From NCBI RefSeq assembly GCF_001194135.2, contig NC_069004.1, positions 9,356,890 through 9,420,889 of the forward strand: DNA of 64,000 bases. Direction: 5' to 3'. The DNA is from Octopus bimaculoides. Lineage: Eukaryota. The translations under genes and the position numbers were made by a program. Under the pieces are notes generated by a model. The model was not told the origin of the DNA and made no database searches. It saw nothing but the letters and a program-made list of their open reading frames with translations. Positions within the stretch are counted from its first letter, which is position 1; every line of letters begins with the position of its first letter. Shown one piece after another: positions 28,356-61,744 of the stretch.

Positions 28356-29234
28356 NNNNNNNNNNNNNNNNNNNNNNNNNNNNNNNNNNNNNNNNNNNNN
28401 NNNNNNNNNNNNNNNNNNNNNNNNNNNNNNNNNNNNNNNNNNNNNNNNNNNNNNNNNNNNNNNNNNNNNNNNNNNNNNNNNNNNNNNNNNNNNNNNNNNN
28501 NNNNNNNNNNNNNNNNNNNNNNNNNNNNNNNNNNNNNNNNNNNNNNNNNNNNNNNNNNNNNNNNNNNNNNNNNNNNNNNNNNNNNNNNNNNNNNNNNNNN
28601 NNNNNNNNNNNNNNNNNNNNNNNNNNNNNNNNNNNNNNNNNNNNNNNNNNNNNNNNNNNNNNNNNNNNNNNNNNNNNNNNNNNNNNNNNNNNNNNNNNNN
28701 NNNNNNNNNNNNNNNNNNNNNNNNNNNNNNNNNNNNNNNNNNNNNNNNNNNNNNNNNNNNNNNNNNNNNNNNNNNNNNNNNNNNNNNNNNNNNNNNNNNN
28801 NNNNNNNNNNNNNNNNNNNNNNNNNNNNNNNNNNNNNNNNNNNNNNNNNNNNNNNNNNNNNNNNNNNNNNNNNNNNNNNNNNNNNNNNNNNNNNNNNNNN
28901 NNNNNNNNNNNNNNNNNNNNNNNNNNNNNNNNNNNNNNNNNNNNNNNNNNNNNNNNNNNNNNNNNNNNNNNNNNNNNNNNNNNNNNNNNNNNNNNNNNNN
29001 NNNNNNNNNNNNNNNNNNNNNNNNNNNNNNNNNNNNNNNNNNNNNNNNNNNNNNNNNNNNNNNNNNNNNNNNNNNNNNNNNNNNNNNNNNNNNNNNNNNN
29101 NNNNNNNNNNNNNNNNNNNNNNNNNNNNNNNNNNNNNNNNNNNNNNNNNNNNNNNNNNNNNNNNNNNNNNNNNNNNNNNNNNNNNNNNNNNNNNNNNNNN
29201 NNNNNNNNNNNNNNNNNNNNNNNNNNNNNNNNNN
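28356..29234. other. Assembly gap (largest in the window)
   Basis: N-run. Other gaps: 8517-8526, 10009-10411, 11230-11547, 20443-20781, 37113-37836, 38562-38790, 43028-43037, 54900-54909. Confidence 1.
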
Positions 29235-36140: not shown

Positions 36141-38429
36141 ACAAAGCTCCTTCCTGAGTCACATACACTCATAGGGCTTGATCCTCTAGCATATATATAC
36201 GACCCCTGGATGGGATGCCAGTCTGCTGCAGGAATACTCACTTTTTGCCAGCGGAGTGGACTGGAGCAACATGAAACAAAGTGTGTTGCTCAAGAACACA
36301 ACACAGCACTCAATCAAGCAGTGACAGGGGGAAAACGCAGATATATACCTATATATACACGACAGGCTTCTTTCAGTTTCTGTCTACCAAATCCACTCAC
36401 AAGGTTTTGGTCAGCATAATGTTATAGTAGAAGACATTTGTCCAAGGTGCCACACAGTGGGATTGAACCCAGAACCATGTGATTGGGAAACAAGTTTCTT
36501 ACCACACAGCCATGCCTGTACCTATATATATCTTTATCTTTTATCTCTTACTTGTTTCTGTCATTAGACTGTGGCCAAGCTGAGGTACCATTTAGAAGAG
36601 TTTAAGTCAAACAAATCAACTCCACTACTTATACTATCAGTCTCTTTTACTGAATCTTAAGGTATGGGGACAAAAACAAACCAGCACCGGTTGTCAAGCA
36701 GTAGGAAAACAAACACACTCACACACACACACATATATATTTACATATGCATGATGAGATTCTACAGTTTTCTGTCTACCAAATTTACTCACAAGGCATT
36801 GGTGGGTCTGGGGCTATAGCAGAATACATCTGCCCAAAAGTGTTACACAGGGGCCTGAAGTCAGAACCACGTGGTTGCAAAGCAAAATTCTTAACCATAC
36901 AACCTTGTCCACACCTGTGACAGACAGACAGACAGACAGAGTTTGATTTTAAAAACCTTAAAAATAATGACGAAAATTATAAAGCAAGAAAAAGAGATAA
37001 AAAAAAAAAAACCAAAGTAAAACACCCAAAGCATAGTTTATTGACACTGATATCATCATCATCATCATCATCATCATCACTGCCATTGTCGTTATCATCA
37101 TCATCATCATCANNNNNNNNNNNNNNNNNNNNNNNNNNNNNNNNNNNNNNNNNNNNNNNNNNNNNNNNNNNNNNNNNNNNNNNNNNNNNNNNNNNNNNNN
37201 NNNNNNNNNNNNNNNNNNNNNNNNNNNNNNNNNNNNNNNNNNNNNNNNNNNNNNNNNNNNNNNNNNNNNNNNNNNNNNNNNNNNNNNNNNNNNNNNNNNN
37301 NNNNNNNNNNNNNNNNNNNNNNNNNNNNNNNNNNNNNNNNNNNNNNNNNNNNNNNNNNNNNNNNNNNNNNNNNNNNNNNNNNNNNNNNNNNNNNNNNNNN
37401 NNNNNNNNNNNNNNNNNNNNNNNNNNNNNNNNNNNNNNNNNNNNNNNNNNNNNNNNNNNNNNNNNNNNNNNNNNNNNNNNNNNNNNNNNNNNNNNNNNNN
37501 NNNNNNNNNNNNNNNNNNNNNNNNNNNNNNNNNNNNNNNNNNNNNNNNNNNNNNNNNNNNNNNNNNNNNNNNNNNNNNNNNNNNNNNNNNNNNNNNNNNN
37601 NNNNNNNNNNNNNNNNNNNNNNNNNNNNNNNNNNNNNNNNNNNNNNNNNNNNNNNNNNNNNNNNNNNNNNNNNNNNNNNNNNNNNNNNNNNNNNNNNNNN
37701 NNNNNNNNNNNNNNNNNNNNNNNNNNNNNNNNNNNNNNNNNNNNNNNNNNNNNNNNNNNNNNNNNNNNNNNNNNNNNNNNNNNNNNNNNNNNNNNNNNNN
37801 NNNNNNNNNNNNNNNNNNNNNNNNNNNNNNNNNNNNGACAGACAAAATACTGCCAAGCATTTAGCCCAGATGCTAAGAATTCTGCAAGCTTGCTGCCTTA
37901 GGAGAATTGATAATAATAATAATAATATTAATAATAATAACAATAATACTAATAATAATAATAATTATGGTTTCACATTTTGACACAAGGCCAGCAATTT
38001 TGAGGAAGAGGTAAGTCAATTACTCCTATATGGACCCCAATGTTCAACTGGTACTTATTTTATCAAATCCTCAAGGATGAAAGGCAAAGTCAACCTTGGC
38101 AGAATTTGAACTCAGAACGTAAAGGCAGACAAAATACCGCCAAGCATTTTAGCCCAGCGTGCTAATAGTTCCTTCCGCTCGCTCACTGCCTTAGGAGAAT
38201 TTGATGATAATAAGATTAATAATAATAATCCTTTCTATTTATAGGTTGAAGGTCTGGAATTTGTGGGGAGGGGATAGTTGATTTCATTGACCCCCTCGCC
38301 CCGACCCCAGTACTTGACTGGTACTTAATTTATCGACCCTCAAAGGATGAAAGGCAACAATGGACTAAATGCAGCTAAGCATTTTGCTCAGTGCTAACAA
38401 TTCTGCCAGCTCACTGCCTCAGGAGAATC

Positions 38430-38468
<39 letters not shown>

Positions 38469-38790
38469 TATCATTATTATTATAATATAATAATAATTAT
38501 TATTATCATTATTACCATAATTATCAACAAAGGAGTTTCATCGTTTACTTTACGCATTCCCNNNNNNNNNNNNNNNNNNNNNNNNNNNNNNNNNNNNNNN
38601 NNNNNNNNNNNNNNNNNNNNNNNNNNNNNNNNNNNNNNNNNNNNNNNNNNNNNNNNNNNNNNNNNNNNNNNNNNNNNNNNNNNNNNNNNNNNNNNNNNNN
38701 NNNNNNNNNNNNNNNNNNNNNNNNNNNNNNNNNNNNNNNNNNNNNNNNNNNNNNNNNNNNNNNNNNNNNNNNNNNNNNNNNNNNNNNNNN

Positions 38791-39103: not shown

Positions 39104-39297
39104 CTACCTTCTTTTCTCTCCTTTCTGGGTACGTTTCTTCTCGTTTTCCTTCCTCTCTTGGCGTTTGTTTTTCTGTGCTTCGCGGTCCTGTTTGTCCTTC
39201 TCCTTCTTCTTCTCGTTCTCCTGCTTCATCTTCTCCCGCATCTCTTTCTCCTGCCTCTGAATGCTGTCCCGGTTCATGTTAGCCAGCAGAGGCATCG
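39104..39297 (-). CDS. CCDC43: CCDC43 exon 5, C-terminal coiled coil
   Basis: Acceptor tttgaaag|CG (phase 1). (A)MPLLANMNRDSIQRQEKEMREKMKQENEKKKEKDKQDREAQKNKRQERKENEKKRTQKGEKRR* matches the CCDC43 C-terminus KQERKEKEKKRTQRGERKR. TAG at 39104-39106. Assembled protein is 229 aa. Confidence 0.93.
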
Positions 39298-40384
39298 CTT
39301 TCAAACAGTTAAGGAGTCCAAGACCGAAAAGAAATAGCAACCGGACACACGTGACCAGCGAGGGGTAGGGAGAAAGAGTAGCAGAGGTAGAAGAAGGGGA
39401 GGAAGTAAAATATAAGTTAGCAACGAGAGGTAGAGAGGGAATGGTCTGTGTATTACAGCATACGTAAGTGTTAAAGCATACCTACGCGTGAGGTCGCATG
39501 GCCCAGCGGTTAATGTGTTGCACTAACAATCATGAAATTGTGGTTTCAATTTCAGGACCAAGTGGAGTGTTGTGTTCTTGAGCAAAACACTTTGACACCC
39601 AGCATGTGGTACACTGTGCATCTGTTCAGGCAACGTCGATTTGATGGAGGAAGTGAGAGAATGTACTGCACATGCATTTGATGACTATAAATAAATCATT
39701 TATACAGCTTGTTTAGCAAAAAACTGCAGAACCATCTTTCTCAGATGAGAGCCTACGATCACATTACAGCTGAGTTCTACACAATTGTGTTAACTTTATT
39801 TCTATTTCTAACAAGAATACATTCTATTTTTTGTGCCAGGTAACCAGCAAACTTGAGTCAAGCAGAGTAATGTACCTTATACAATGTGTGTGTGTATACA
39901 GACGTCTCCATACCTTCTGCTTGTTTCAGTCACCAGACGGTAGCCCTGAAGGGTTTTAGTTGAACAAATCAGCCCCATAAAGTGACAGTATGATGTCAAC
40001 TTAATGTGACAGTCCCATATATGTTATGTGTGCATGTTTGCATTTTGCCAGTGCATGACAATCGTAAACAAATGTCACCGTCATACAACCAGTCATTTGT
40101 TTCCAATCTTCCATGAAAATATGTCAGGCCATAAGAAAAATTTACCTTGCTTGGAAACTGGTGAGGGTTAGCAACAGGAAGGGCACCCAACTATAGAAAT
40201 CTGGTTTATGTAAGTATAGGAAAGAGGACATTAAAATGATGCTGAGAATCATGTTTGGAGGATGTGGAAATGGTAAATGGCTGAAAGTAACAAAAGAATT
40301 TATTAGAAAAAAGGATACATGTAACTGGGTTCAAATTGTTGCTACCGGCAGCAGAAGCTGCAGGGATCAGGTTTGCTATGTTAC

Positions 40385-40443
40385 CTGGGACAGAAGTATT
40401 GGCTCCTGACTGAATGGGTTCCGGTTCTGATAGTTCAATTCCC
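40385..40443 (-). CDS. CCDC43: CCDC43 exon 4 (59 nt)
   Basis: Preceded by the U12 branch site TTTCCTTGAC and tatccctcag|. Reads (Q)GIELSEPEPIQSGANTSVP. Donor CCAG|GTAACA. Phases 2 in and 1 out join exons 3 and 5 in frame. Confidence 0.88.
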
Positions 40444-40490
40444 CTGAGGGATAGTCAAGGAAACAATTAAAAAAAAAACGAAAAAAAAAA

Positions 40491-40532
<42 letters not shown>

Positions 40533-41159
40533 TGCACATATATATATATATGCATGTATGCACATACAACAAGGAAAGAAAAGAGTCATAAAAAAAAAAT
40601 TCAAAAACAAGTGGGGATATTAACATTTGTTTTTTTTTTGTTTAAATAACTATTTTTAACATAAGCAGAAGAAACTGGTTCCTTATTTTACCAAGCAAAG
40701 AAGGATGAAAAGCAGAGCTGACCTTAACCTGGATTGAACCATTCATCTAACAAACTGTAGGAAAACGCCTGCCTGTTCGTCCATCCATCCTTTCTTTCCT
40801 TCCTCACCACTCACTATTCCTAGGAGGGCCACAGAGGTAGAATGCTCAGGTATCTCTGCACAAAAGCCCCATCAGAAGCAACTGCCATGGCACTTTCCTG
40901 CTGGATTTCCAAACATGACTGACACTATGGATATTATCCAACCGCATTGCTTTTGGTTCACCCCAAGGTCTCCTGCTGGTTGGCCCTGGTTTGAAGAATC
41001 TGTTTTGCAATCCTTTCCTGCAGCATTCTAACCCCATATCTGTAATATTGTGGCATCCATTGTTCAAATTAGCAAATATTGGTAGCTCGATACATTTCTA
41101 AATAAATATATATATATATATATATCATTTAACGTCCGCTTTCCATGCTAGCATGGGTT

Positions 41160-41195
<36 letters not shown>

Positions 41196-41633
41196 GTATG
41201 TATGTGTGTATTCTTTTACTTGTTTCAGTCAGAATTGAAATATGAATGGGTTGGCTATGTATGCAATTCTGTCTTACATGCAGGTCATAGGTGGAGAAAA
41301 CTGGGATGAATAAACTACAGTAACAACAAAAGCAATTCTGAACACTTGTCTGAGATTAGCGAACAGAAAGGTAGCAGCGTGCTTATGTATGGTGAGTCAT
41401 CTAACCATCAAATATCGACTTCAGTCAAATATGAATTGCTTCCCTTGATCATTTGTTTTTTTTTCTATTCGATTCGTATGTGTGCGAGTGTGTAAACACA
41501 CATACACAAACAAACACATACTCACACATCCATACACACATCATGACCCTCTTAATACAAATATCTCCACTACCACACACTCACTCAGACACACACACAC
41601 AAAAAAGCCTCTAATACCAATTACTAAGGATAC
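40444..41633 (-). other. CCDC43: U12-type (minor spliceosome) GT-AG intron, CCDC43 intron 3
   Basis: 5' site GTATCCTT (41633-41626) matches RTATCCTT. Branch site TTTCCTTGAC (40463-40454) lies 10 nt before the 3' splice junction, with no long polypyrimidine tract. Confidence 0.9.
40800..41045 (-). mobile_element. 3' end of an RTE-like LINE, in CCDC43 intron 3
   Basis: Frameshifted minus-strand translation RMLQERIAKQILQ..., RRPWGEPKAMRLDNI..., ...AVASDGAFVQRYLSILPL resembles RTE C-termini (RMxxERxxKQxL...RPxGRPRxRWLD). Confidence 0.6.
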
Positions 41634-41799
41634 TGGTCAGCTTCATCACAGACTGTAGAGTACTGCACCAATATGGCACGTTTCTGGGCCAATTCCTCTT
41701 CACTGAGTTGTTTGGCTTTCTTCTCAGTACAACTGGTCACAACATGTGTATTAGTGAGCATTTTGGACAGCCGTTCATCCAGGGGTGTCTTGTTGGGTT
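41634..41799 (-). CDS. CCDC43: CCDC43 exon 3 (166 nt)
   Basis: Acceptor gtatctttcag|AA (phase 1). EPNKTPLDERLSKMLTNTHVVTSCTEKKAKQLSEEELAQKRAILVQYSTVCDEAD resembles SEEEKQRKAALLAQYADV. Ends at a phase-2 U12-type donor CA|GTATCCTTAG. Confidence 0.92.
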
Positions 41800-42534: not shown

Positions 42535-43280
42535 TTGTGTTGAGCCAAATGATTTTGCAATATTTGGTAACTTATTTGTATAATTCGTCGAGTTACAAAC
42601 AAAAGCAGCCTCACATTTAAAGCAGAGGCCATCGTGTTGCACCGCCTGAAGCCACCTTTCTTTGATCCCACGTTGATACCAGTTCTTGTCTCCCGAGGTG
42701 AAGAACTCCTTCACTGAATCTTCCACCTTTTTCTTTTTGTTGGTGAAGTGTTACAGGCGCAGGAAATAAACCATGGATTGAAACAAGTAATAATCCGAGA
42801 GAAATAAGTTCAGACTATATGCTGGGTGTGACATCAGTTCAATTCCCTCAAGCTCCTGCAGTTTATTCTGGGCAATTATGCAGTATGGGGTCGTGCTGCA
42901 GAAGAGCTCCCTTTCTTATTTCTTTATTGTCCACAAGGGGCTTAAACATAGAGGGGACAAACAAGGACAGACAAAGGGATTAAGTCGATTACACCGACCC
43001 CAGTGCGTAACTGGTACTTAATTTATCNNNNNNNNNNCCGACCCCAGTGCGTAACTGGTACTTAATTTATCGACTCCGAAAGGATGAAAGGCAAAGTTGA
43101 CCTCAGCGGAATTTGAACTCAGAACGTAATGGCGGACGAAATACCGCTCAGCATTTCGCCTGGTGTGCTAATGCTTCTGCCAGCTCGCCGCCTTTGAAAG
43201 TGAGAAGAGCTCACTTTCTATTAACCAATGTCAGGTATTTTTGTCATACAATGGCATACATTGACTCTAGCTGTAAGGAG
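42535..43280 (-). mobile_element. Decayed mariner transposon (C-terminal half and one TIR) in CCDC43 intron 2, interrupted by a SINE
   Basis: Minus-strand fragments LQLESMYAIV*QKYLTLVNRK*ALL, LLQHD, KLQELEGIELMSHPAYS...SDYYLFQSM and VEDSVKEFFTSGDKNWYQRGIKERWLQAVQHDG. The end TTGTGTTGAGCCAAATG follows a TA. Confidence 0.85.
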
Positions 43281-43715: not shown

Positions 43716-43800
43716 CCTTTTTGTTTTCTTTGGAATCTACATTACACATCTCATCCCATTTCTTTATCACTTCATCACAGATTTCTTCTTTAGAGTCTTC
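43716..43800 (-). CDS. CCDC43: CCDC43 exon 2 (85 nt)
   Basis: Acceptor tttgtttgtttcaatttcag|GAA. EDSKEEICDEVIKKWDEMCNVDSKENKK resembles EDSLLNICKEIVERW of vertebrate CCDC43. Phase-1 donor G|GTAAGC. Confidence 0.92.
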
Positions 43801-46420: not shown

Positions 46421-46606
46421 CGCTATTTCCCCGACGATGTCCAACAGGGAGTCCTTCTTCTCATCATATCCGCTGTACGACTCGAGGATGCCATTGATGT
46501 ACGTGACAAACACACCGGCATCAAGATCGTCATTTAATTGCAGCAGTCTCGTCTCCAGCCATCGTGTAAAGCCATCAGAGTCATTACACATGGATACAGC
46601 CGCCAT
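46421..46606 (-). CDS. CCDC43: CCDC43 exon 1 (62 codons)
   Basis: ATG at 46606 (ttcagcATGG). MAAVSMCNDSDGFTRWLETRLLQLNDDLDAGVFVTYINGILESYSGYDEKKDSLLDIVGEIA resembles the CCDC43 N-terminus (FxxWLxxRL...vyxxYIxGIL). Phase-0 donor GCG|GTACGG. Confidence 0.92.
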
Positions 46607-51988: not shown

Positions 51989-52531
51989 ATGTCGTTCTGT
52001 TTACCATACCTCAGGCTTTACCGCCATCTCTCAGCATTCACAGCTCTGTGTCAAAGACATTTTCAACTGGGACAGATTCATTCGCTCAAAGTGACCCCTG
52101 CCCTTCCTCTGGTCAGAACGGCTGCAACAAAAGCTGCAAAGCATGAAGTAATAGTTTCACAATCAACGTGTATCTTTGAAAACCTTTCTCTGGAAGAATG
52201 GCTATTCGAAAACACAGACTTGGAAAATACATCTTATCTGTTGATCTGGCGAAACACTGAAACGGTTGTGATTGGGCGGCACCAGAATGCTTGGATTGAA
52301 GCCAATGTGCCACTGCTGGAACAGAAAGGTGTCAGCATTGCACGCAGGAACAGTGGCGGAGGAACCGTTTACCATGATCTTGGCAACATCAACTTCTGTT
52401 TCCTAACATCGCGTGAACGATACGACAGAAAGTGGAACCTGAATCTTGTGACCGAGGCTGTTAACGATCAGTGGATGTTAAATCTCAGTGTGAATGCCCG
52501 AGATAACATCATGTGGAATGACATGTTTAAG
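51989..52531 (+). CDS. LIPT1: Lipoyltransferase 1 (mitochondrial), first coding exon
   Basis: The Arg/Leu/Ser-rich, acid-free N-terminus looks like a mitochondrial presequence. LplA-family motifs: ENLSLEEWL, LLIWRNTETVVIGRHQNAW, IARRNSGGGTVYHDLGNINFCFLT. Phase-0 donor AAG|GTGAGT. A 5'UTR acceptor ttttatttttcag| lies at 51927. Confidence 0.95.
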
Positions 52532-53460
52532 GTGAGTAACCAAGAATGTTATTTTGGTTCTTTATTAGTCAGTATGTCATAGACATTGTGACCTTGTCAC
52601 CATAAATGATACCTTTGTACAAACATACCAACCACTTGAGGCTTGTTGCAGTTGTCCACGCTTTCAGGTATTTGCGACAGAAGTCAAGCGACAAATGTAC
52701 ATTACATGTCATTTATATGATTTCAAGTATGTTTTTTTGTAAATCTTTGTAACCATGTTACGAGTGAAATACATTGCCTTTCCTTTATGAAAGACAAATT
52801 TGATTCCTGTTCAATTTAAACTCTGACCATTAGGAAACAATGTTGAAATTATTGTGTCAACCAATATTATGAATGACATGTCCACCGACACTCATGTTCA
52901 GTCAACACTACCAGTGTTGACTGAACGACTGTACTGTTGGACAAAATGCTTCGTGGCATTTCATCTGTCTTTACATTCTGAGTTCAAATGCTGCCAAGGT
53001 CAATGTTGCCTTTCATCCTTTCAGTGGTTGATAAAATAAGTACCCATTGAACCCTGAGGTCAAAGTAATTGTCTTCTCACCTTCACTGAAATTACTGGCC
53101 TTGTGCCAAAATTTGAAACAGTCATTAAGGTGGTGAGGCAGCAGAATCATTAGCTTGTTGGACAAAAGGCTTAGTAGCATTTTGTCCAGTTTTACATTCT
53201 GAGTTCAAATCCCACCAAGGTCAGCTTTGTCTTTCATCTGTTGAGGCTATTACAATATCATAGAGAGTTAAGCTAGGTTACTAGGCTACATCTACGTGAC
53301 CTCTGATGTATAATTTTGGCCAGCAGTTGTGAGTTTTGAGCCTACATTGAGTGCATTGGATGCAGGGGGATTTTTAAACCCATTTTTGGGTAAAAAAAGG
53401 TGTGTCTTACAGGCCATCAAATATGGATGTTTTGCGTCCTTGTCCCATTTTGTATTATTT

Positions 53461-54118: not shown

Positions 54119-55989
54119 GTAATTAAAAGACAGCTGTTTCCTTGGTGTTCCATCAATCCTTATTAGATATTTTTGGCTTAATTAACTAATTAACCCCTTT
54201 GTTTCCATATTTCTGTTGAAATTCCCTTCCATTCTTTCAATTAATTTTGAAAATAATGAAGAATTTGGTAAAAATAATCCTGTCATTATCTTTTGTTTTT
54301 ACTTGTTTCAGTCACTAGACTGTGGCCATGCTGGGGCAATGCCTTGAAGAGTTTTTAGTCAAATGAATTGACCCTGGTGCTTCTTTATTTTATTGGTCTC
54401 TTATACCGAACTGCTAAGTTACAAGGACATAAACAAACCAAGACTGGTTGTCAAGTGGTGGGAGGGGACACACACACACATATATATATGACAGACTTCT
54501 TTCAGTTTCTGTCTACCAAATCCACTCACAATGATTTGGTCGGCCTGAGGCTATAGTAGAAGACACTTACCCAAGGTGCCACCCAGTGAGACTGAACCCA
54601 GGACCATGTTGTTGGGAAGCAAGTTTCTTACCACACAGCCACTCCTGTGCCTTTAAAGATGTTTGCTGAGCAGTCACCCATCTAAGTACTAACCAGGCTC
54701 CTTATTGCTTAACTTCAGTGACCGGACAAGAAACCCTTTTGTTACCAAATTTCTGTTGAAATGCACTACCACTGGAACATATACAACCCCAGTGAGAGTT
54801 GAACTTGGTATGTAAATGGACTAAGCTAAATACAGCAGACCAGACTATTTAGTCTCATATTTTACCATTCCTGCTTCTTTTAATGCCCTTTAACAATATN
54901 NNNNNNNNNGATTTCGATTCCCAAACCCGGCGTTGTGAGTGTTTATCGAGCGAAAACACCTAAAGCTCCATGAGGCTCCGGCAGGGGATGGTGGCGAACC
55001 CTGCTGTACTCTTTCACCACAACTTTCTCTCACTCTTACTTCCTGTTTCTGTTGTACCTGTAATTCAAAGGGCCAGCCTTGTCACACTGTGTCACGCTGA
55101 ATCTCCCCGAGAACTACGTTAAGGGTACACGTGTCTGTGGAGTGCTCAGCCACTTGCACATTAATTTCACGAACAGGCTGTTCCGTTGATCTGATCAACT
55201 GGAACCCTCGACGTCGTAAGCGACTGAGTGCCAACAACAACAACAACAATATCCTCAATCATTCCTTTTGTTTAACAACCAACTGTTTTAGTAGAATACT
55301 ACAATTAATTACTTTTCAGAATGTTATTTGTCACCCTATTTTACTGCCGCAGAAATTTGCAACCATGATCAGCTTTGGTTGAAGTTCCTATACCCCTGAA
55401 TAAGCTTGAATTTGTGTGCCTCACTTAGGTCAATAACCTTAAAAAAATATGTAGTATGGAGAAGAGAAATAACTCTAGTTGCTTAAGCTGTTATAATTAT
55501 AAAGAGTTACGTCCCTAGAAATATTAGCTTGCATATTTCTCTAATTCTTTCACGCTCACTAATTCCATTCACCACCATCCACGTCCAACGTTTGAAGAAT
55601 ATTGCTTGTTGTTGTGTAGTTGTTAAGCTTTAATCGACAAGACCTAAGATTAAAGTCATTTAAACGTGATCATTTCTTTTTTGCATTATATGTCCAGGAC
55701 GCCAATATCGAACGCGTCTTTTCTTTTTTTTAATGGCGGCAAGGCGTAATTTGAGGGAAATACGACCGATATTTTCGGCAGGTCGGATGACCACGTAGGC
55801 ACTTCTTCATTGCGTCTTTCCTTATTTCTTTGGTTGAAGGATCAGGGCGGCGGCGAGGCAGTGGGTAACTAACTTTCGAAGAAGCTATGAAATAAATCTC
55901 AGCGAATTTCTTAGGGGATGCAGATTCTGTCTGTCTGTCTCCTGTACGTATATGTATATACATTGTGTGTGTATATATATATATATAGT

Positions 55990-57574: not shown

Positions 57575-57991
57575 CCAACATCCATTGAATTCCTCGACCT
57601 TAAGAAAGACCGGAGCCGTTTTCCTGGTTTAGATAAAATCTTAGAAAATCGCTTGGACTGGAAATGGATTTTTGGCAAGACTCCAACTTTTACTTTGGAT
57701 CGTCATTTCATCACACACTGCTACCAATCCAGAGAGACTTGCTTAAGGATCCACTGTAAAATTCAAGATGGCTGCATTAACACGTTAGATATCCAGTTAT
57801 CTCCCTTAGACCAAAAACTTGATAGACTCGCTTCCTCAACAAAAAATGCTTTACTGACAGAAAGACTTAGCGGAAAACATTTACAACCAGTTTTTGAAAG
57901 ACTGCGTCAGAATTTTTCTGAAGTCAAGGAAATATCACCACATCTTTTAGATTGGTTTTTAAATAGCTTATGGGTGACTTTTTTTGGTTGA
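57575..57991 (+). CDS. LIPT1: LIPT1 terminal coding exon
   Basis: Acceptor (t)n-ctaatccag|CCA. PTSIEFLDLKKDRSRFPGLDKILENRLDWKWIFGKTPTF... contains the FPG and W.W..GKTP.F motifs. TGA at 57989-57991. Assembled protein is 401 aa. Confidence 0.93.
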   Translation, partial: PTSIEFLDLKKDRSRFPGLDKILENRLDWKWIFGKTPTFTLDRHFITHCYQSRETCLRIHCKIQDGCINTLDIQLSPLDQKLDRLASSTKNALLTERLSGKHLQPVFERLRQNFSEVKEISPHLLDWFLNSLWVTFFG

Positions 57992-58574: not shown

Positions 58575-61500
58575 CTTTAGAGAGAAATAAAACAACAAAT
58601 TTCAAAACATCCTAATAAAGAAAATATAAATATTACTTCACAGCTTTATATTTGTCTCTTACAAATATTGTGTGTGTGTGTGTGGATTTACATTTTACTG
58701 GTTCCAATAATTGGATCCTGACCATACTGGATCATCATCACCTTGAAGGTTTTTAATTGATTACTACAACCCCTGTAATTGTTGTAAATCTGATTCTTAT
58801 TTTTATTGACCCATATATATCAAACACAACAGAACATAAAGGTACAACACAATATAAACACAACATCATGATTTAAAAAATATTTATTTAGTCAGGAGGG
58901 GAGGCATTTCCCAGAATTCTTTGCAGCAGAATAGGTGTCTGGTGGATATCCTCAAACTGGAGACTTGGCTTGAATGGCCTGAATGCTTATAATAGTGTGG
59001 CCTCCACTGAAGACAATGATGGTGTCAGGTGGGAGTGTTAAACTGTGATGGATGGAATCTACCATATTTGGATTTGAACTTAGAATGCATAGAGCCAGAA
59101 GAAATATATCACAGCATCCACTACATTGTGTATATTAATATGTACCATCATCATCATCATTTAGTATCTGTTGTCCATGCTTGGATGGTTTGACCAAGGT
59201 TGCACCAGACCACAATCTGATTGTGTGTGTGTGTGTGTGTGTATGTGTATTGGATTACCAGATAAATTACTTCATTTTTTTCTTACTTTATTCCTTTCTG
59301 ATATTATTTGAATTAATATGGAAAGTATTTTTATTGCAGAGCAAGAACAGGGCTAGAAATAAGCATAAAACACTCCAACTTTTTAAAATCGTTTTTGAAT
59401 AAATTTTATCTGCTTTCAGAGATATGATGATGATGGGAGTGCCAAGTAGAAAAAAAATGACTGAATTTGTTTGACAACACAGTGTGTGTGTATTAGTGTA
59501 TAAGAGAATGACCTTTTATATAATAAAAACTAAATCAAACCTTTCAATAAACAGATCAATAAGATAAGTTCCGAACTAAACTTGTAAGTTCAATGTCATT
59601 GACTAAAACCTCTTTAAGACAGTGTCTCCTCAATTTGTTGCTACTGTTTTTGTCGACAGGTCGTATCCTTGGCTGAGACCCTAAACTGTTAATGGCCCAG
59701 TTCACTTGGTTGTAAATAGATAACCATTGCATAATGTATTATCTAGTTCAATGCTCTGTCCTTATTTAAAACACTCAACTGATAGCAGCCTATATACTTT
59801 ATTGTAAGTAGATGGTACATTGTAGTAGATAGTTTACTGGCTTAGATTTTTGTTATGATGCTTAATTGTACTTAGAGTTGTGAGTGGATGCCATGATGTA
59901 GTGTAGAGTTCAGTGTTTTGTCCTTGACTAAGACACTTACACTTAACCAATAACAACTCACTTCACCCTGTGCACTTAGTTGCATGTACCACTGAATGGT
60001 TTAGTTCACTGTATTATAGTGTAGTACATAGTACACTGTGAATGTATGTGGCTTAGTGGTTAGGGTATTTGGCTTAAGGTTGTAGGGTCATGAGTTCAAC
60101 TCCTGGTGGTGCATTGTGTCCTTGAGCAAGACACTTTATTTCACGTTGCTCCAATTCACTCAGCTGGCAAAAATGAGTAGTACTTGTAATTCAAAGGGCC
60201 AGCCTTGTCACGTTTTGTGTCGCACTGAATTTCCCTGGGAATTACATTAAAGATATATGTATCTGTGGAGTGCTCAGCCACTTGGATGTTAATTTCATAA
60301 GCAGGCTGTTCCATTGATCGGATCAGCTGGAACCCTTGTCATCGTAACTGACAGAGTGCCAGTTAAAGTACACTGACACAGGGCCTTAACTGCTACCAAC
60401 TCTGTTCCCTAGCTCAGAGTCTTCATTATTAACTGCTCAGTCCACTAAGTTGTAAGTAGGTGCTACAATATGGTATAATTCATACTTTTATGTCCATGGC
60501 CAGCACACTTAGCTCAGTCCACCTATCTGTATACAGGTACCCTTTTACAATACAGTTGTATATTTTACCTTATTACCTATTAGAATAGTTTTATCCTAAT
60601 AGTTGTAAACACACCCTGTATGTAGGTACCCCATAACGATCTAGTTAGTTCTTTATACTGATTCCATGGCCAATACACTTAACTCAGATAACTGAACCCA
60701 TCTATTGGTAATTATATATCACATTTAAGGCAGCAAGCTGGGCAAAATGCTTAGTGGTATTTCGTCTGTCTTTACGTTCTGAGTTCAAATTCTGCCGAGG
60801 TTGACTTTGTCTTTCATCCTTTCGGGGTCGATGAGATAAGCACATATATATATGACAGGCTTCTTTCAGTTTCCATCTACCAAATTCACTCACAAGGCTT
60901 TGGTCAGCCCGAGACTATAGTAGAAGACACACACCCAAGGTGCCACACAGTGGGACTGAACCCGGAACCATATGGCTGGTAGGCAAGCTACTTACCACAC
61001 AGCCACTCCTGGCATATATATATATATATATGTATATTCATTCAACTTATGATTCACTCCTTTACTTCTGAGAGTCTCTTAATGTTTCTTACTCTGTGAT
61101 CATCATTTAGCCAACAAAGAGATAAAAAGCTTCTACTTAAAAAAGAAAAAAGAGAGAGTTTTTGTTGTTAATAAAGAAAAACCTTGAGAAAAGTCACACC
61201 TAAACATGTAACACTCCTGGCTTTTGAAATTTGCCTATAAAAATATAAATAGATAAATTTTTAGCAACTATAGGGAGTGGTGTGAGATATTTTGGCTTGA
61301 AATCCAGTCAAAAACGCCCTTTTTTTTTTTTCAGTCACATCCTTCTCATCTGTGAACAATCATTATCGTGGCATTTTCCAGCTAAACGTTGACCAATAAC
61401 TTTGTATAAAACCACTTTTTGTTATTCACCTTCAAAGCCAAAAAAAAAAAAAGAAAAAGAAACCAAAACCAATCACAAAAAGACCTAACCAACCTGAACT

Positions 61501-61744
61501 GCGTCCTACTTTTCCATAATAGATATTTTATGGGATTGTCAAAAAGTATTAGATTACAATTAGAGAACAGAGATATCACATGCAACAATGAGGTTTACCA
61601 TGACAAAAGTTGTGTAATACTATGAGCAATTAGTTAAGGAAGAAGAAAAAGAGAAAGACGTTTATATTCGTGAATCTGTTGTACATGAAATGCTGGTAAC
61701 TAGAATAGCAATAGAAAGTGGATTCATGATCGTTCACACATATA

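What the first reader, a model, noticed from the sequence alone, without database searches (positions are those of the whole stretch)
39298..39315. Second U12-type branch site before the last CCDC43 exon: a possible minor-spliceosome exon-skipping switch
Seen: intron 4 starts with a U2-type donor (CAG|GTAACA). Its 3' end reads ...GGACTCCTTAACTGTTTGAAAG|: TCCTTAAC followed by exactly 10 nt to the junction, the same geometry as the true U12 acceptor of intron 3 (TTTCCTTGAC plus 10 nt). A pyrimidine tract lies upstream of the branch site rather than next to the AG. Established: TCCTTRAC close to the 3' splice site is the U12 signature, and U12 donors normally pair only with U12 acceptors. Inference: the exon-3 U12 donor has two compatible acceptors. 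Skipping the 59-nt exon 4 would give ...CDEAD-HDASAG*, a 151-aa protein lacking the coiled coil, with its stop in the last exon and so not an EJC-dependent NMD target. This would be a hybrid U2/U12 acceptor that lets minor-spliceosome activity control the isoform.
Basis: partly seen in the sequence, partly recalled or inferred. Interest (0 to 1): 0.75.

Follow-up and report, generated by a model that had tools for sequence, protein, structure and literature searches.

The report
Second conserved U12 intron of CCDC43
The TCCTTAAC motif is the ordinary branch site of a second minor-spliceosome (U12) intron in the octopus CCDC43 gene; this pair of adjacent U12 introns is shared with scallop, sea slug, starfish and human, so the feature is real but already understood.

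Summary
The sequence is as described. On the minus strand, TCCTTAAC (39315-39308) lies 10 nt before the AG at 39299-39298 that precedes the last CCDC43 exon. "Intron 4" does not start at CAG|GTAACA (40384). That site lies inside coding exon 4 (Pro-Gly-Asn codons). The real donor is a perfect U12 5' splice site, GTATCCTTTT, at 40318, 66 nt downstream and in frame. With it, the five-exon model translates to a 251-aa protein identical to the annotated Octopus bimaculoides CCDC43 (XP_014789563.1).

So exon 4 is 125 nt and is flanked by two ordinary U12-type GT-AG introns. There is no hybrid U2/U12 acceptor. The same tandem pair is found in O. sinensis, O. vulgaris, Argonauta, Pecten, Aplysia and the starfish Patiria. 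The literature reports it in human CCDC43.

Joining the intron-3 donor to the intron-4 acceptor is annotated as O. sinensis isoform X3 and as the O. vulgaris model. In human it is the "AT-AG hybrid intron" of NM_001099225.1. No such product is on record for O. bimaculoides, and the frameshifted tail is not conserved between octopus species.

Verdict: a real feature and an ordinary ortholog of a known arrangement. Low interest.

The parts
39308..39315 (-). Branch site TCCTTAAC of CCDC43 intron 4 (U12-type). The presumed branch adenosine is 39309, with 11 nt between it and the splice junction.
   Evidence: A TCCTTRAC-like motif sits 9-16 nt before the AG of the orthologous intron in O. sinensis, O. 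vulgaris, Argonauta, Pecten, Aplysia and Patiria and in human (TCCCTTAAC).
39298..39307 (-). 10-nt spacer tgtttgaaag ending in the 3' splice-site AG (39299-39298). There is no pyrimidine tract here.
   Evidence: 50% pyrimidine. The module TCCTTAAC(C)TGTTT(TC)GAAAG is shared with O. sinensis and O. vulgaris.
40309..40318 (-). The true 5' splice site of intron 4, AT|GTATCCTTTT. It is a perfect U12-type GT-subtype donor.
   Evidence: The same donor ends exon 4 in O. sinensis, O. vulgaris, Argonauta, Pecten, Aplysia and Patiria.
39298..40318 (-). CCDC43 intron 4: 1021 nt, U12-type GT-AG, phase 1.
   Evidence: Spliced mapping. The resulting protein is identical to XP_014789563.1.
40319..40443 (-). 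CCDC43 exon 4: 125 nt, encoding (Q)GIELSEPEPIQSGANTSVPGNIANLIPAASAAGSNNLNPVT(S). It is flanked on both sides by U12 introns.
   Evidence: The exon is 125 nt in all three Octopus species.
40379..40387 (-). It lies inside exon 4 (codons CCA GGT AAC).
   Evidence: it matches 7 of 9 consensus positions and is conserved in three Octopus species as coding sequence. No protein using it is on record.
40444..41633 (-). CCDC43 intron 3: 1190 nt, U12-type GT-AG, phase 2. Donor GTATCCTTAG is at 41633-41624. Branch site TTTCCTTGAC is at 40463-40454, with branch A at 40455.
   Evidence: The orthologous intron is U12-type in all eight species examined. It is AT-AC in Patiria and in human.
41634..41799 (-). 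CCDC43 exon 3 (166 nt).
39104..39297 (-). Coding part of CCDC43 exon 5: the C-terminal coiled-coil region, with stop TAG at 39106-39104. The stop used after exon-4 skipping is TAA at 39281-39279.
43716..43800 (-). CCDC43 exon 2 (85 nt, flanked by U2-type introns).
46421..46606 (-). Coding part of CCDC43 exon 1 (ATG at 46606).

Best explanation
The window is Octopus bimaculoides DNA, and the gene on the minus strand is CCDC43. The motif at 39315-39308 is the branch site of intron 4. Intron 4 is an ordinary U12-type (minor-spliceosome) GT-AG intron running from the donor GTATCCTTTT at 40318 to the AG at 39298.

Inferred from the established mechanism of minor splicing:
- U11 snRNA pairs with the donor.
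- U12 snRNA pairs with UCCUUAAC and bulges the adenosine at 39309.
- The AG 11-12 nt downstream is chosen by distance, so no pyrimidine tract is needed.

Intron 3 (41633-40444) is a second U12-type intron. The 125-nt exon 4 is therefore flanked by U12 signals on both sides. This tandem pair is ancestral: it is present in molluscs, an echinoderm and human.

Because the intron-3 donor and the intron-4 acceptor are both U12-type, they can be joined directly. That skips exon 4, shifts the frame and removes the C-terminal coiled-coil domain. The junction is annotated in two sister octopus species and in human.

In O. bimaculoides I consider skipping a likely low-level by-product of the architecture rather than a tuned switch. 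This last point is inference.
For: 1. Donor and branch site match the U12 consensus exactly and sit at the right distance from the AG.
2. The five-exon model using the donor at 40318 gives a 251-aa protein identical to XP_014789563.1, CCDC43 of O. bimaculoides. O. sinensis isoforms X1 and X2 contain the same 22-aa stretch.
3. I mapped annotated proteins onto genomic loci. GTATCCTT donors and TCCTTRAC-like branch sites are present at both intron 3 and intron 4 in O. sinensis, Argonauta hians and Pecten maximus, O. vulgaris, Aplysia and Patiria miniata, where intron 3 is AT-AC.
4. A decapod RNA-derived contig (L008, 957 nt) carries the uninterrupted open reading frame, including the homologous exon-4 segment.
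5. Human CCDC43 has an AT-AC intron (branch site TTCCTTAAC). [quoted passage not shown] See 10.1101/2020.08.06.239418, figure legend and supplementary tables; published as PMC8280824.
6. Skipping models: O. sinensis X3 (P0005) and O. vulgaris P0004 map as exon 3 joined directly to exon 5. The O. vulgaris annotation used Iso-Seq and RNA-seq (PMC10700109).
Against: - No RNA-seq reads could be examined, so use of the junctions in O. bimaculoides rests on the RefSeq model and on orthology.
- Neither the skipped 151-aa product nor any transcript contig of this species is in the collection.
- Excision by the minor spliceosome is inferred from sequence signals, not shown.
- I did not check the evidence behind the O. 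sinensis X3 and O. vulgaris models. They could in principle be annotation artefacts, although they come from two independent pipelines.
- Mouse Ccdc43 shows an alternative-splicing event that rises when U11 is lost (10.1101/2020.05.18.101246). The text read does not say which event it is. Some minor-spliceosome-dependent regulation of this gene therefore cannot be excluded.
Confidence: 0.93

Rival explanations
1. Intron 4 begins at the U2-type donor CAG|GTAACA (40384) and ends at a hybrid acceptor that serves both U2 splicing (from 40384) and U12 splicing (from the intron-3 donor). Minor-spliceosome activity then sets the isoform ratio.
For: CAGGTAACA matches 7 of 9 positions of the U2 5' splice-site consensus. 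It is in frame with exon 5 and is present in three Octopus species. O. bimaculoides has a pyrimidine-rich stretch and a CTAAC upstream of the branch site, and no AG between them and the acceptor. These could in principle serve the major spliceosome.
Against: - The site lies in coding sequence that is kept in the annotated O. bimaculoides protein and in O. sinensis X1 and X2.
- The 229-aa product is absent from the collection, and no similar isoform appeared among the homologs.
- A perfect U12 donor lies 66 nt downstream and is conserved as far as starfish.
- The upstream pyrimidine/CTAAC stretch is missing in O. sinensis and O. vulgaris.
- Conservation of GGTAAC in Octopus is explained by the Gly-Asn codons.
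Confidence: 0.03
2. Exon-4 skipping by pairing the intron-3 U12 donor with the intron-4 U12 acceptor is a regulated, functionally selected event. It would produce a CCDC43 protein with only the N-terminal domain, conserved from molluscs to human.
For: The skip junction is annotated in O. sinensis, O. vulgaris and human. Exon 4 length is 2 mod 3 in every species mapped end to end (125, 134, 80, 47 and 38 nt), so skipping always removes the coiled coil. In O. bimaculoides the new stop lies in the last exon. The tandem arrangement has been kept for a very long time.
Against: - The frameshifted tail is not conserved: 6 residues in O. bimaculoides and about 70 unrelated residues in O. sinensis.
- The constant length class follows simply from conserved intron phases.
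- Oyster converted intron 4 to a U2-type intron, which abolishes the option.
- There are no expression data.
- The Turunen review states that the functional significance of the few reported U12 exon-skipping events is not known (PMC3584512).
Confidence: 0.1
3. The TCCTTAAC is a chance 8-mer, or an ordinary U2 branch point (CTTAAC fits yUnAy) of a U2-type intron.
For: The 8-mer frequency in the window is near the composition expectation. CTTAAC fits the loose U2 branch consensus.
Against: - It is paired with a perfect, in-frame GTATCCTTTT donor.
- Its distance to the AG is typical of U12 introns.
- There is no pyrimidine tract after it.
- The motif is retained at the orthologous intron in seven other species, while the flanking intron sequence diverges.
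Confidence: 0.02

Closest known systems
Human CCDC43 tandem minor introns and the AT-AG 'hybrid' U12 intron of NM_001099225.1 (de Wolf et al. 2021, EMBO J, PMC8280824; preprint 10.1101/2020.08.06.239418)
   Same: It is the orthologous gene. Two adjacent U12-type introns flank a short exon just before the last exon. The downstream acceptor carries a TCC(C)TTAAC branch site close to its AG. Exon skipping arises by joining the upstream U12 donor to the downstream U12 acceptor.
   Different: In human and in the starfish the upstream intron is the AT-AC subtype, so the skip intron is AT-AG. In octopus and the other molluscs both introns are GT-AG, so the skip intron is an unremarkable GT-AG. The skipped isoform is RefSeq-annotated in human but not in O. 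bimaculoides.
JNK/MAPK8-10 mutually exclusive exons, with a U12 5' splice site facing a U2-type branch site and 3' splice site (described in Turunen et al. 2013, PMC3584512)
   Same: Splice-site class compatibility (U12 with U12, U2 with U2) dictates which exons can be joined.
   Different: JNK has a true mixed U12/U2 arrangement that gives mutually exclusive exons. Here both introns are purely U12-type, and the outcome is simple inclusion or skipping.
Genes with two U12-type introns (about 50 in human, e.g. voltage-gated ion channels; PMC3584512)
   Same: More than one minor intron in a single gene.
   Different: In CCDC43 the two are directly adjacent. This is what makes U12-to-U12 exon skipping possible. 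The review notes that such skipping has been reported in only a few instances.

Membership tests
U12-type (minor spliceosome) intron, GT-AG subtype | 5' splice site matching /RTATCCTT | tested here: met
   GTATCCTTTT at 40318-40309. It is in frame with exons 4 and 5.
U12-type (minor spliceosome) intron, GT-AG subtype | Branch site matching TCCTTRAC | tested here: met
   TCCTTAAC at 39315-39308, 8 of 8 positions.
U12-type (minor spliceosome) intron, GT-AG subtype | Short branch-site-to-3'-splice-site distance (roughly 10-20 nt; range quoted from my own knowledge of the field) with no pyrimidine tract in between | tested here: met
   11 nt separate branch A 39309 from the junction. The 8 spacer bases before the AG are 50% pyrimidine.
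U12-type (minor spliceosome) intron, GT-AG subtype | The intron at the orthologous position is U12-type in other lineages | tested here: met
   O. sinensis, O. vulgaris, Argonauta, Pecten, Aplysia and Patiria. Human from the literature. Exception: Crassostrea virginica intron 4 is U2-type.
U12-type (minor spliceosome) intron, GT-AG subtype | The junction is actually used in mRNA | tested here: inconclusive
   The junction reproduces the RefSeq protein XP_014789563.1 exactly. A decapod transcript contig carries the homologous continuous open reading frame. No O. bimaculoides reads were available.
U12-type (minor spliceosome) intron, GT-AG subtype | Excision depends on U11, U12, U4atac and U6atac snRNPs | not testable with these tools
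   This needs knock-down or inhibition experiments.
   The proposed donor (40384) lies inside the annotated coding exon. The 229-aa product is not in the collection, and no isoform of that type appears among the homologs.
Exon skipping between tandem U12 introns (human CCDC43 AT-AG type) | Two directly adjacent U12-type introns flank the skipped exon | tested here: met
   Introns 41633-40444 and 40318-39298 flank the 125-nt exon 4.
Exon skipping between tandem U12 introns (human CCDC43 AT-AG type) | The skip junction (upstream U12 donor to downstream U12 acceptor) is observed in transcripts | tested here: inconclusive
   It is annotated in O. sinensis X3 and in the O. vulgaris model and in human NM_001099225.1. 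The O. bimaculoides 151-aa product is not on record. No reads were examined.

The most novel reading that the evidence does not exclude
The tandem U12 intron pair of CCDC43 has been kept since the bilaterian ancestor because U12-to-U12 exon skipping is a regulated way to make a truncated, coiled-coil-less CCDC43. In O. bimaculoides this would be the NMD-exempt 151-aa form ending HDASAG. The inclusion/skipping ratio would be set by how exon 4 is defined between two minor-spliceosome sites.
Probability: 0.08. Interest if true: 0.5.

Novelty: already known. Interest (0 to 1): 0.15.

Why it matters
Mainly as a correction. The striking 'second U12 branch site' is not a new kind of hybrid acceptor.

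The modest biological point is that CCDC43 carries two directly adjacent minor introns from molluscs to human. Along the way the upstream intron switched subtype (AT-AC versus GT-AG), and the downstream intron converted to U2-type in oyster. This architecture permits U12-to-U12 exon skipping, an event the literature calls rare. That makes CCDC43 a convenient natural test case for exon definition by the minor spliceosome, but the arrangement and the skipped isoform are already documented in human.

Tried and rejected
- Chance explanation. Motif counts in the window are close to the composition expectation, so the 8-mer alone proves nothing. I rejected chance only after finding the partner donor and the conservation.
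Rejected by the exact look-up and the ortholog alignment.
- A distant U2 branch point (CTAAC near 39420) plus the long pyrimidine stretch and AG-free zone in O. bimaculoides. I considered these as a possible major-spliceosome route. That roughly 105-nt stretch is absent in O. sinensis and O. vulgaris, so it is not a conserved signal.
- The genomic locus of the cuttlefish protein P0007 was not on record, so no decapod genomic intron could be read.
- My exact-match splice mapper failed on Aplysia. tblastn plus a motif search recovered the structure.
- The local Pfam scan gave no hit for the CCDC43 protein, although precomputed annotations list PF26091 and PF27916. This was not pursued.
- Other U12-like motifs in the window have no partner signal or lie in the wrong context. 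These are GTATCCTT at 59663 (+) and 20981 (-), and TCCTTRAC at 61640, 57930 and 7475 (-) and at 5242 and 59921 (+). They are treated as chance.

Full report
**1. The observation**

- TCCTTAAC occupies 39315-39308 and is followed by tgtttgaaag, 10 nt ending in AG at 39299-39298. The last coding exon starts at 39297.
- The preceding intron has the U12-type donor GTATCCTTAG at 41633. Its branch site TTTCCTTGAC (40463-40454) is also 10 nt from its AG.
- The spacer between TCCTTAAC and the AG is only 50% pyrimidine, against 70-78% further upstream.
- Joining 41634 directly to 39297 gives ...CDEAD-HDASAG*, 151 aa, with the stop TAA at 39281-39279.

The 8-mer by itself is not statistically unusual. 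TCCTTRAC occurs 7 times on the two strands against about 3.8 expected from composition, and RTATCCTT occurs 6 times against about 6.5 expected.

**2.

The same motif scan showed a third minus-strand RTATCCTT at 40318. This is AT|GTATCCTTTT, a perfect U12 donor.
- The 66 nt are an open frame in phase with exon 4, encoding GNIANLIPAASAAGSNNLNPVT.
- Splicing from 40319 to 39297 stays in frame.
- The resulting five-exon model is 46606-46421, 43800-43716, 41799-41634, 40443-40319 and 39297-39104.
- It encodes 251 aa. An exact-sequence look-up shows this is identical to XP_014789563.1, coiled-coil domain-containing protein 43 of Octopus bimaculoides.

So exon 4 is 125 nt, and the GTAACA site lies inside it (codons CCA GGT AAC). 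Intron 4 (40318-39298, 1021 nt) has a consensus U12 donor, a consensus U12 branch site, a short branch-to-AG distance and no pyrimidine tract after the branch site.

**3. Related sequences**

A homology search and alignment show that O. sinensis isoforms X1 and X2, Argonauta and decapod sequences all carry the segment encoded by the long exon 4. I fetched genomic loci and mapped the annotated proteins onto them. "+N" is the number of nt between the end of the branch-site motif and the exon.

| Species | Intron 3 | Exon 4 | Intron 4 |
|---|---|---|---|
| O. sinensis, O. vulgaris | GTATCCTTAA ... TTTCCTTGAC+10 | 125 nt | GTATCCTTTT ... TTTCCTTAAC+13 |
| Argonauta hians | GTATCCTTGT ... ATCCTTAAC+15 | 134 nt | GTATCCTTTA ... 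GTCTTAAC+10 |
| Pecten maximus | GTATCCTTTC ... ATCCTTAAC+9 | 80 nt | GTATCCTTAA ... TTCCTTGAT+10 |
| Aplysia californica | GTATCCTTGA ... GTCCTTAAC+10 | about 85 nt | GTATCCTTTT ... TATCCTTACA, about 12 nt from the AG |
| Patiria miniata (starfish) | ATATCCTTTG ... TTTCCTTAAC+11, ending in AC | 47 nt | GTATCCTTAA ... TTTCCTGAAG, about 10 nt from the AG |
| Crassostrea virginica | U12-type | 38 nt | U2-type (GTAAGA...) |

Between Octopus species the intron sequence upstream of the branch site is not alignable. The module TCCTTAAC(C)TGTTT(TC)GAAAG is kept. A 957-nt RNA-derived contig from a decapod (L008) carries the uninterrupted open reading frame with the homologous segment.

**4. Exon skipping**

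- O. sinensis isoform X3 (P0005) and the O. vulgaris model (P0004) read ...CDE(P/A)D-H(S)ASAGQHEPGQ.... Both map as exon 3 joined directly to exon 5.
- The O. vulgaris genome nevertheless has an intact exon 4 with both U12 signals. Its annotation pipeline used Iso-Seq and RNA-seq (PMC10700109).
- The frameshifted tail differs between species. It stops after six residues in O. bimaculoides and runs for about 70 unrelated residues past the normal stop in O. sinensis. Nothing suggests selection on it.
- Both inclusion and skipping require the minor spliceosome, so overall minor-spliceosome activity is not an obvious switch between them.

**5. Comparison with what is known**

- Human CCDC43 is a documented gene with minor introns. 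The supplementary tables of de Wolf et al. (10.1101/2020.08.06.239418; published as PMC8280824) list two U12 introns for it.
  - An AT-AC intron, chr17:44680644-44682002, NM_144609.2, branch site TTCCTTAAC.
  - An AT-AG intron, chr17:44679044-44682002, NM_001099225.1, branch site TCCCTTAAC.
[quoted passage not shown] That is the same exon-skipping event, already a RefSeq transcript.
- Olthof et al. report a mouse Ccdc43 alternative-splicing event that rises on U11 loss (10.1101/2020.05.18.101246).
- Turunen et al. (PMC3584512) note that about 50 human genes have two U12 introns. They also note that exon skipping involving U12 introns has been reported in only a few instances, of unknown significance.

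The octopus locus is therefore an ortholog of a known arrangement. The differences are evolutionary details of known kinds: the GT-AG rather than AT-AC subtype of intron 3 in molluscs, and the U12-to-U2 conversion of intron 4 in oyster.

**6. Mechanism**

Shown here:
- The sequence signals and their geometry.
- The reading frame.
- Identity to the annotated protein.
- Conservation at the orthologous position.

Inferred from the established mechanism of minor splicing:
- The U11/U12 di-snRNP recognises GTATCCTTTT and UCCUUAAC together.
- The adenosine at 39309 is the branch point.
- The AG is selected by distance.

Also inferred: occasional pairing of the intron-3 donor with the intron-4 branch site yields the skipped mRNA. 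In O. bimaculoides its stop codon lies in the last exon. By the vertebrate exon-junction rule it would escape nonsense-mediated decay. Whether that rule holds in molluscs is unknown to me.

**7. Verdict**

The 'hybrid U2/U12 acceptor' reading is wrong because the exon-4 donor was mis-placed. The exon-skipping idea is plausible but already known for this gene in human and annotated in sister octopuses. This is an ordinary, already-explained feature of low interest.

Noticed in passing
window 51989-52582 (+) and 57653-57991 (+): A lipoyltransferase/lipoate-ligase-like gene (Pfam LplA-B_cat, E = 2e-30) lies head-to-head with CCDC43, about 5.4 kb from its start codon. In Pecten (L004) and Aplysia (L007), a gene with the same domain also lies upstream of CCDC43 on the opposite strand. 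The divergent gene pair therefore appears conserved across molluscs.
   Followed up: partly
L001 24075-24083 (O. sinensis) versus window 39299-39292: O. sinensis and O. vulgaris have a tandem acceptor, gaaAG|cAG|, at the intron-4 3' end. It gives isoforms X1 and X2, which differ by one residue. The O. vulgaris skip model uses the second AG. O. bimaculoides reads gaaAG|CGA and lacks the second AG.
   Followed up: partly
window about 39316-39425 (-): O. bimaculoides has about 105 extra nt of pyrimidine-rich sequence, including a CTAAC, between the conserved block TAATACACARACCATT and the U12 branch site. The stretch is absent in O. sinensis and O. vulgaris. The whole stretch is free of AG dinucleotides. 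Its origin (insertion or local duplication) was not determined.
   Followed up: partly
L006 (Crassostrea virginica) 3197-3442; L005 (Patiria miniata) 3301-3939: Evolutionary changes at the two orthologous introns. Oyster intron 4 is U2-type (GTAAGA donor, no U12 branch site), while its intron 3 remains U12-type. Starfish intron 3 is AT-AC, as in human, whereas all molluscs examined have GT-AG.
   Followed up: partly
P0007 (Acanthosepion pharaonis model), alignment A1 columns about 155-225: The cuttlefish gene model departs from all relatives around the exon 3/4/5 junctions. It has unrelated residues after ...CDETDL and a truncated C-terminus. This looks like mis-annotation around the two U12 introns. 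Its genomic locus was not on record.
   Followed up: no
window 61641-61620 (-); 20981 (-); 59663 (+): Other isolated U12-like motifs were seen. TTCCTTAAC sits 13 nt before an AG at about 61620 on the minus strand, with no partner donor in the window. GTATCCTTTT sits at 20981 (minus), about 200 nt from an assembly gap. GTATCCTTGG sits at 59663 (plus). None has a matching partner or coding context, and their number fits chance.
   Followed up: partly
window 8517-8526, 10009-10411, 11230-11547, 20443-20781, 28356-29234, 37113-37836, 38562-38790, 43028-43037, 54900-54909: There are nine runs of N (assembly gaps, 2922 bases in all). One (43028-43037) lies inside CCDC43 intron 2. TA and TG microsatellites are abundant, including inside intron 3.
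   Followed up: no
P0040 (window CCDC43 protein): The local Pfam copy gave no hit at E <= 0.001 for the 251-aa protein. The precomputed annotations for its cluster representative list PF26091 (PWI_CCDC43) and PF27916 (CCDC43_C). This is probably a library-version difference.
   Followed up: no
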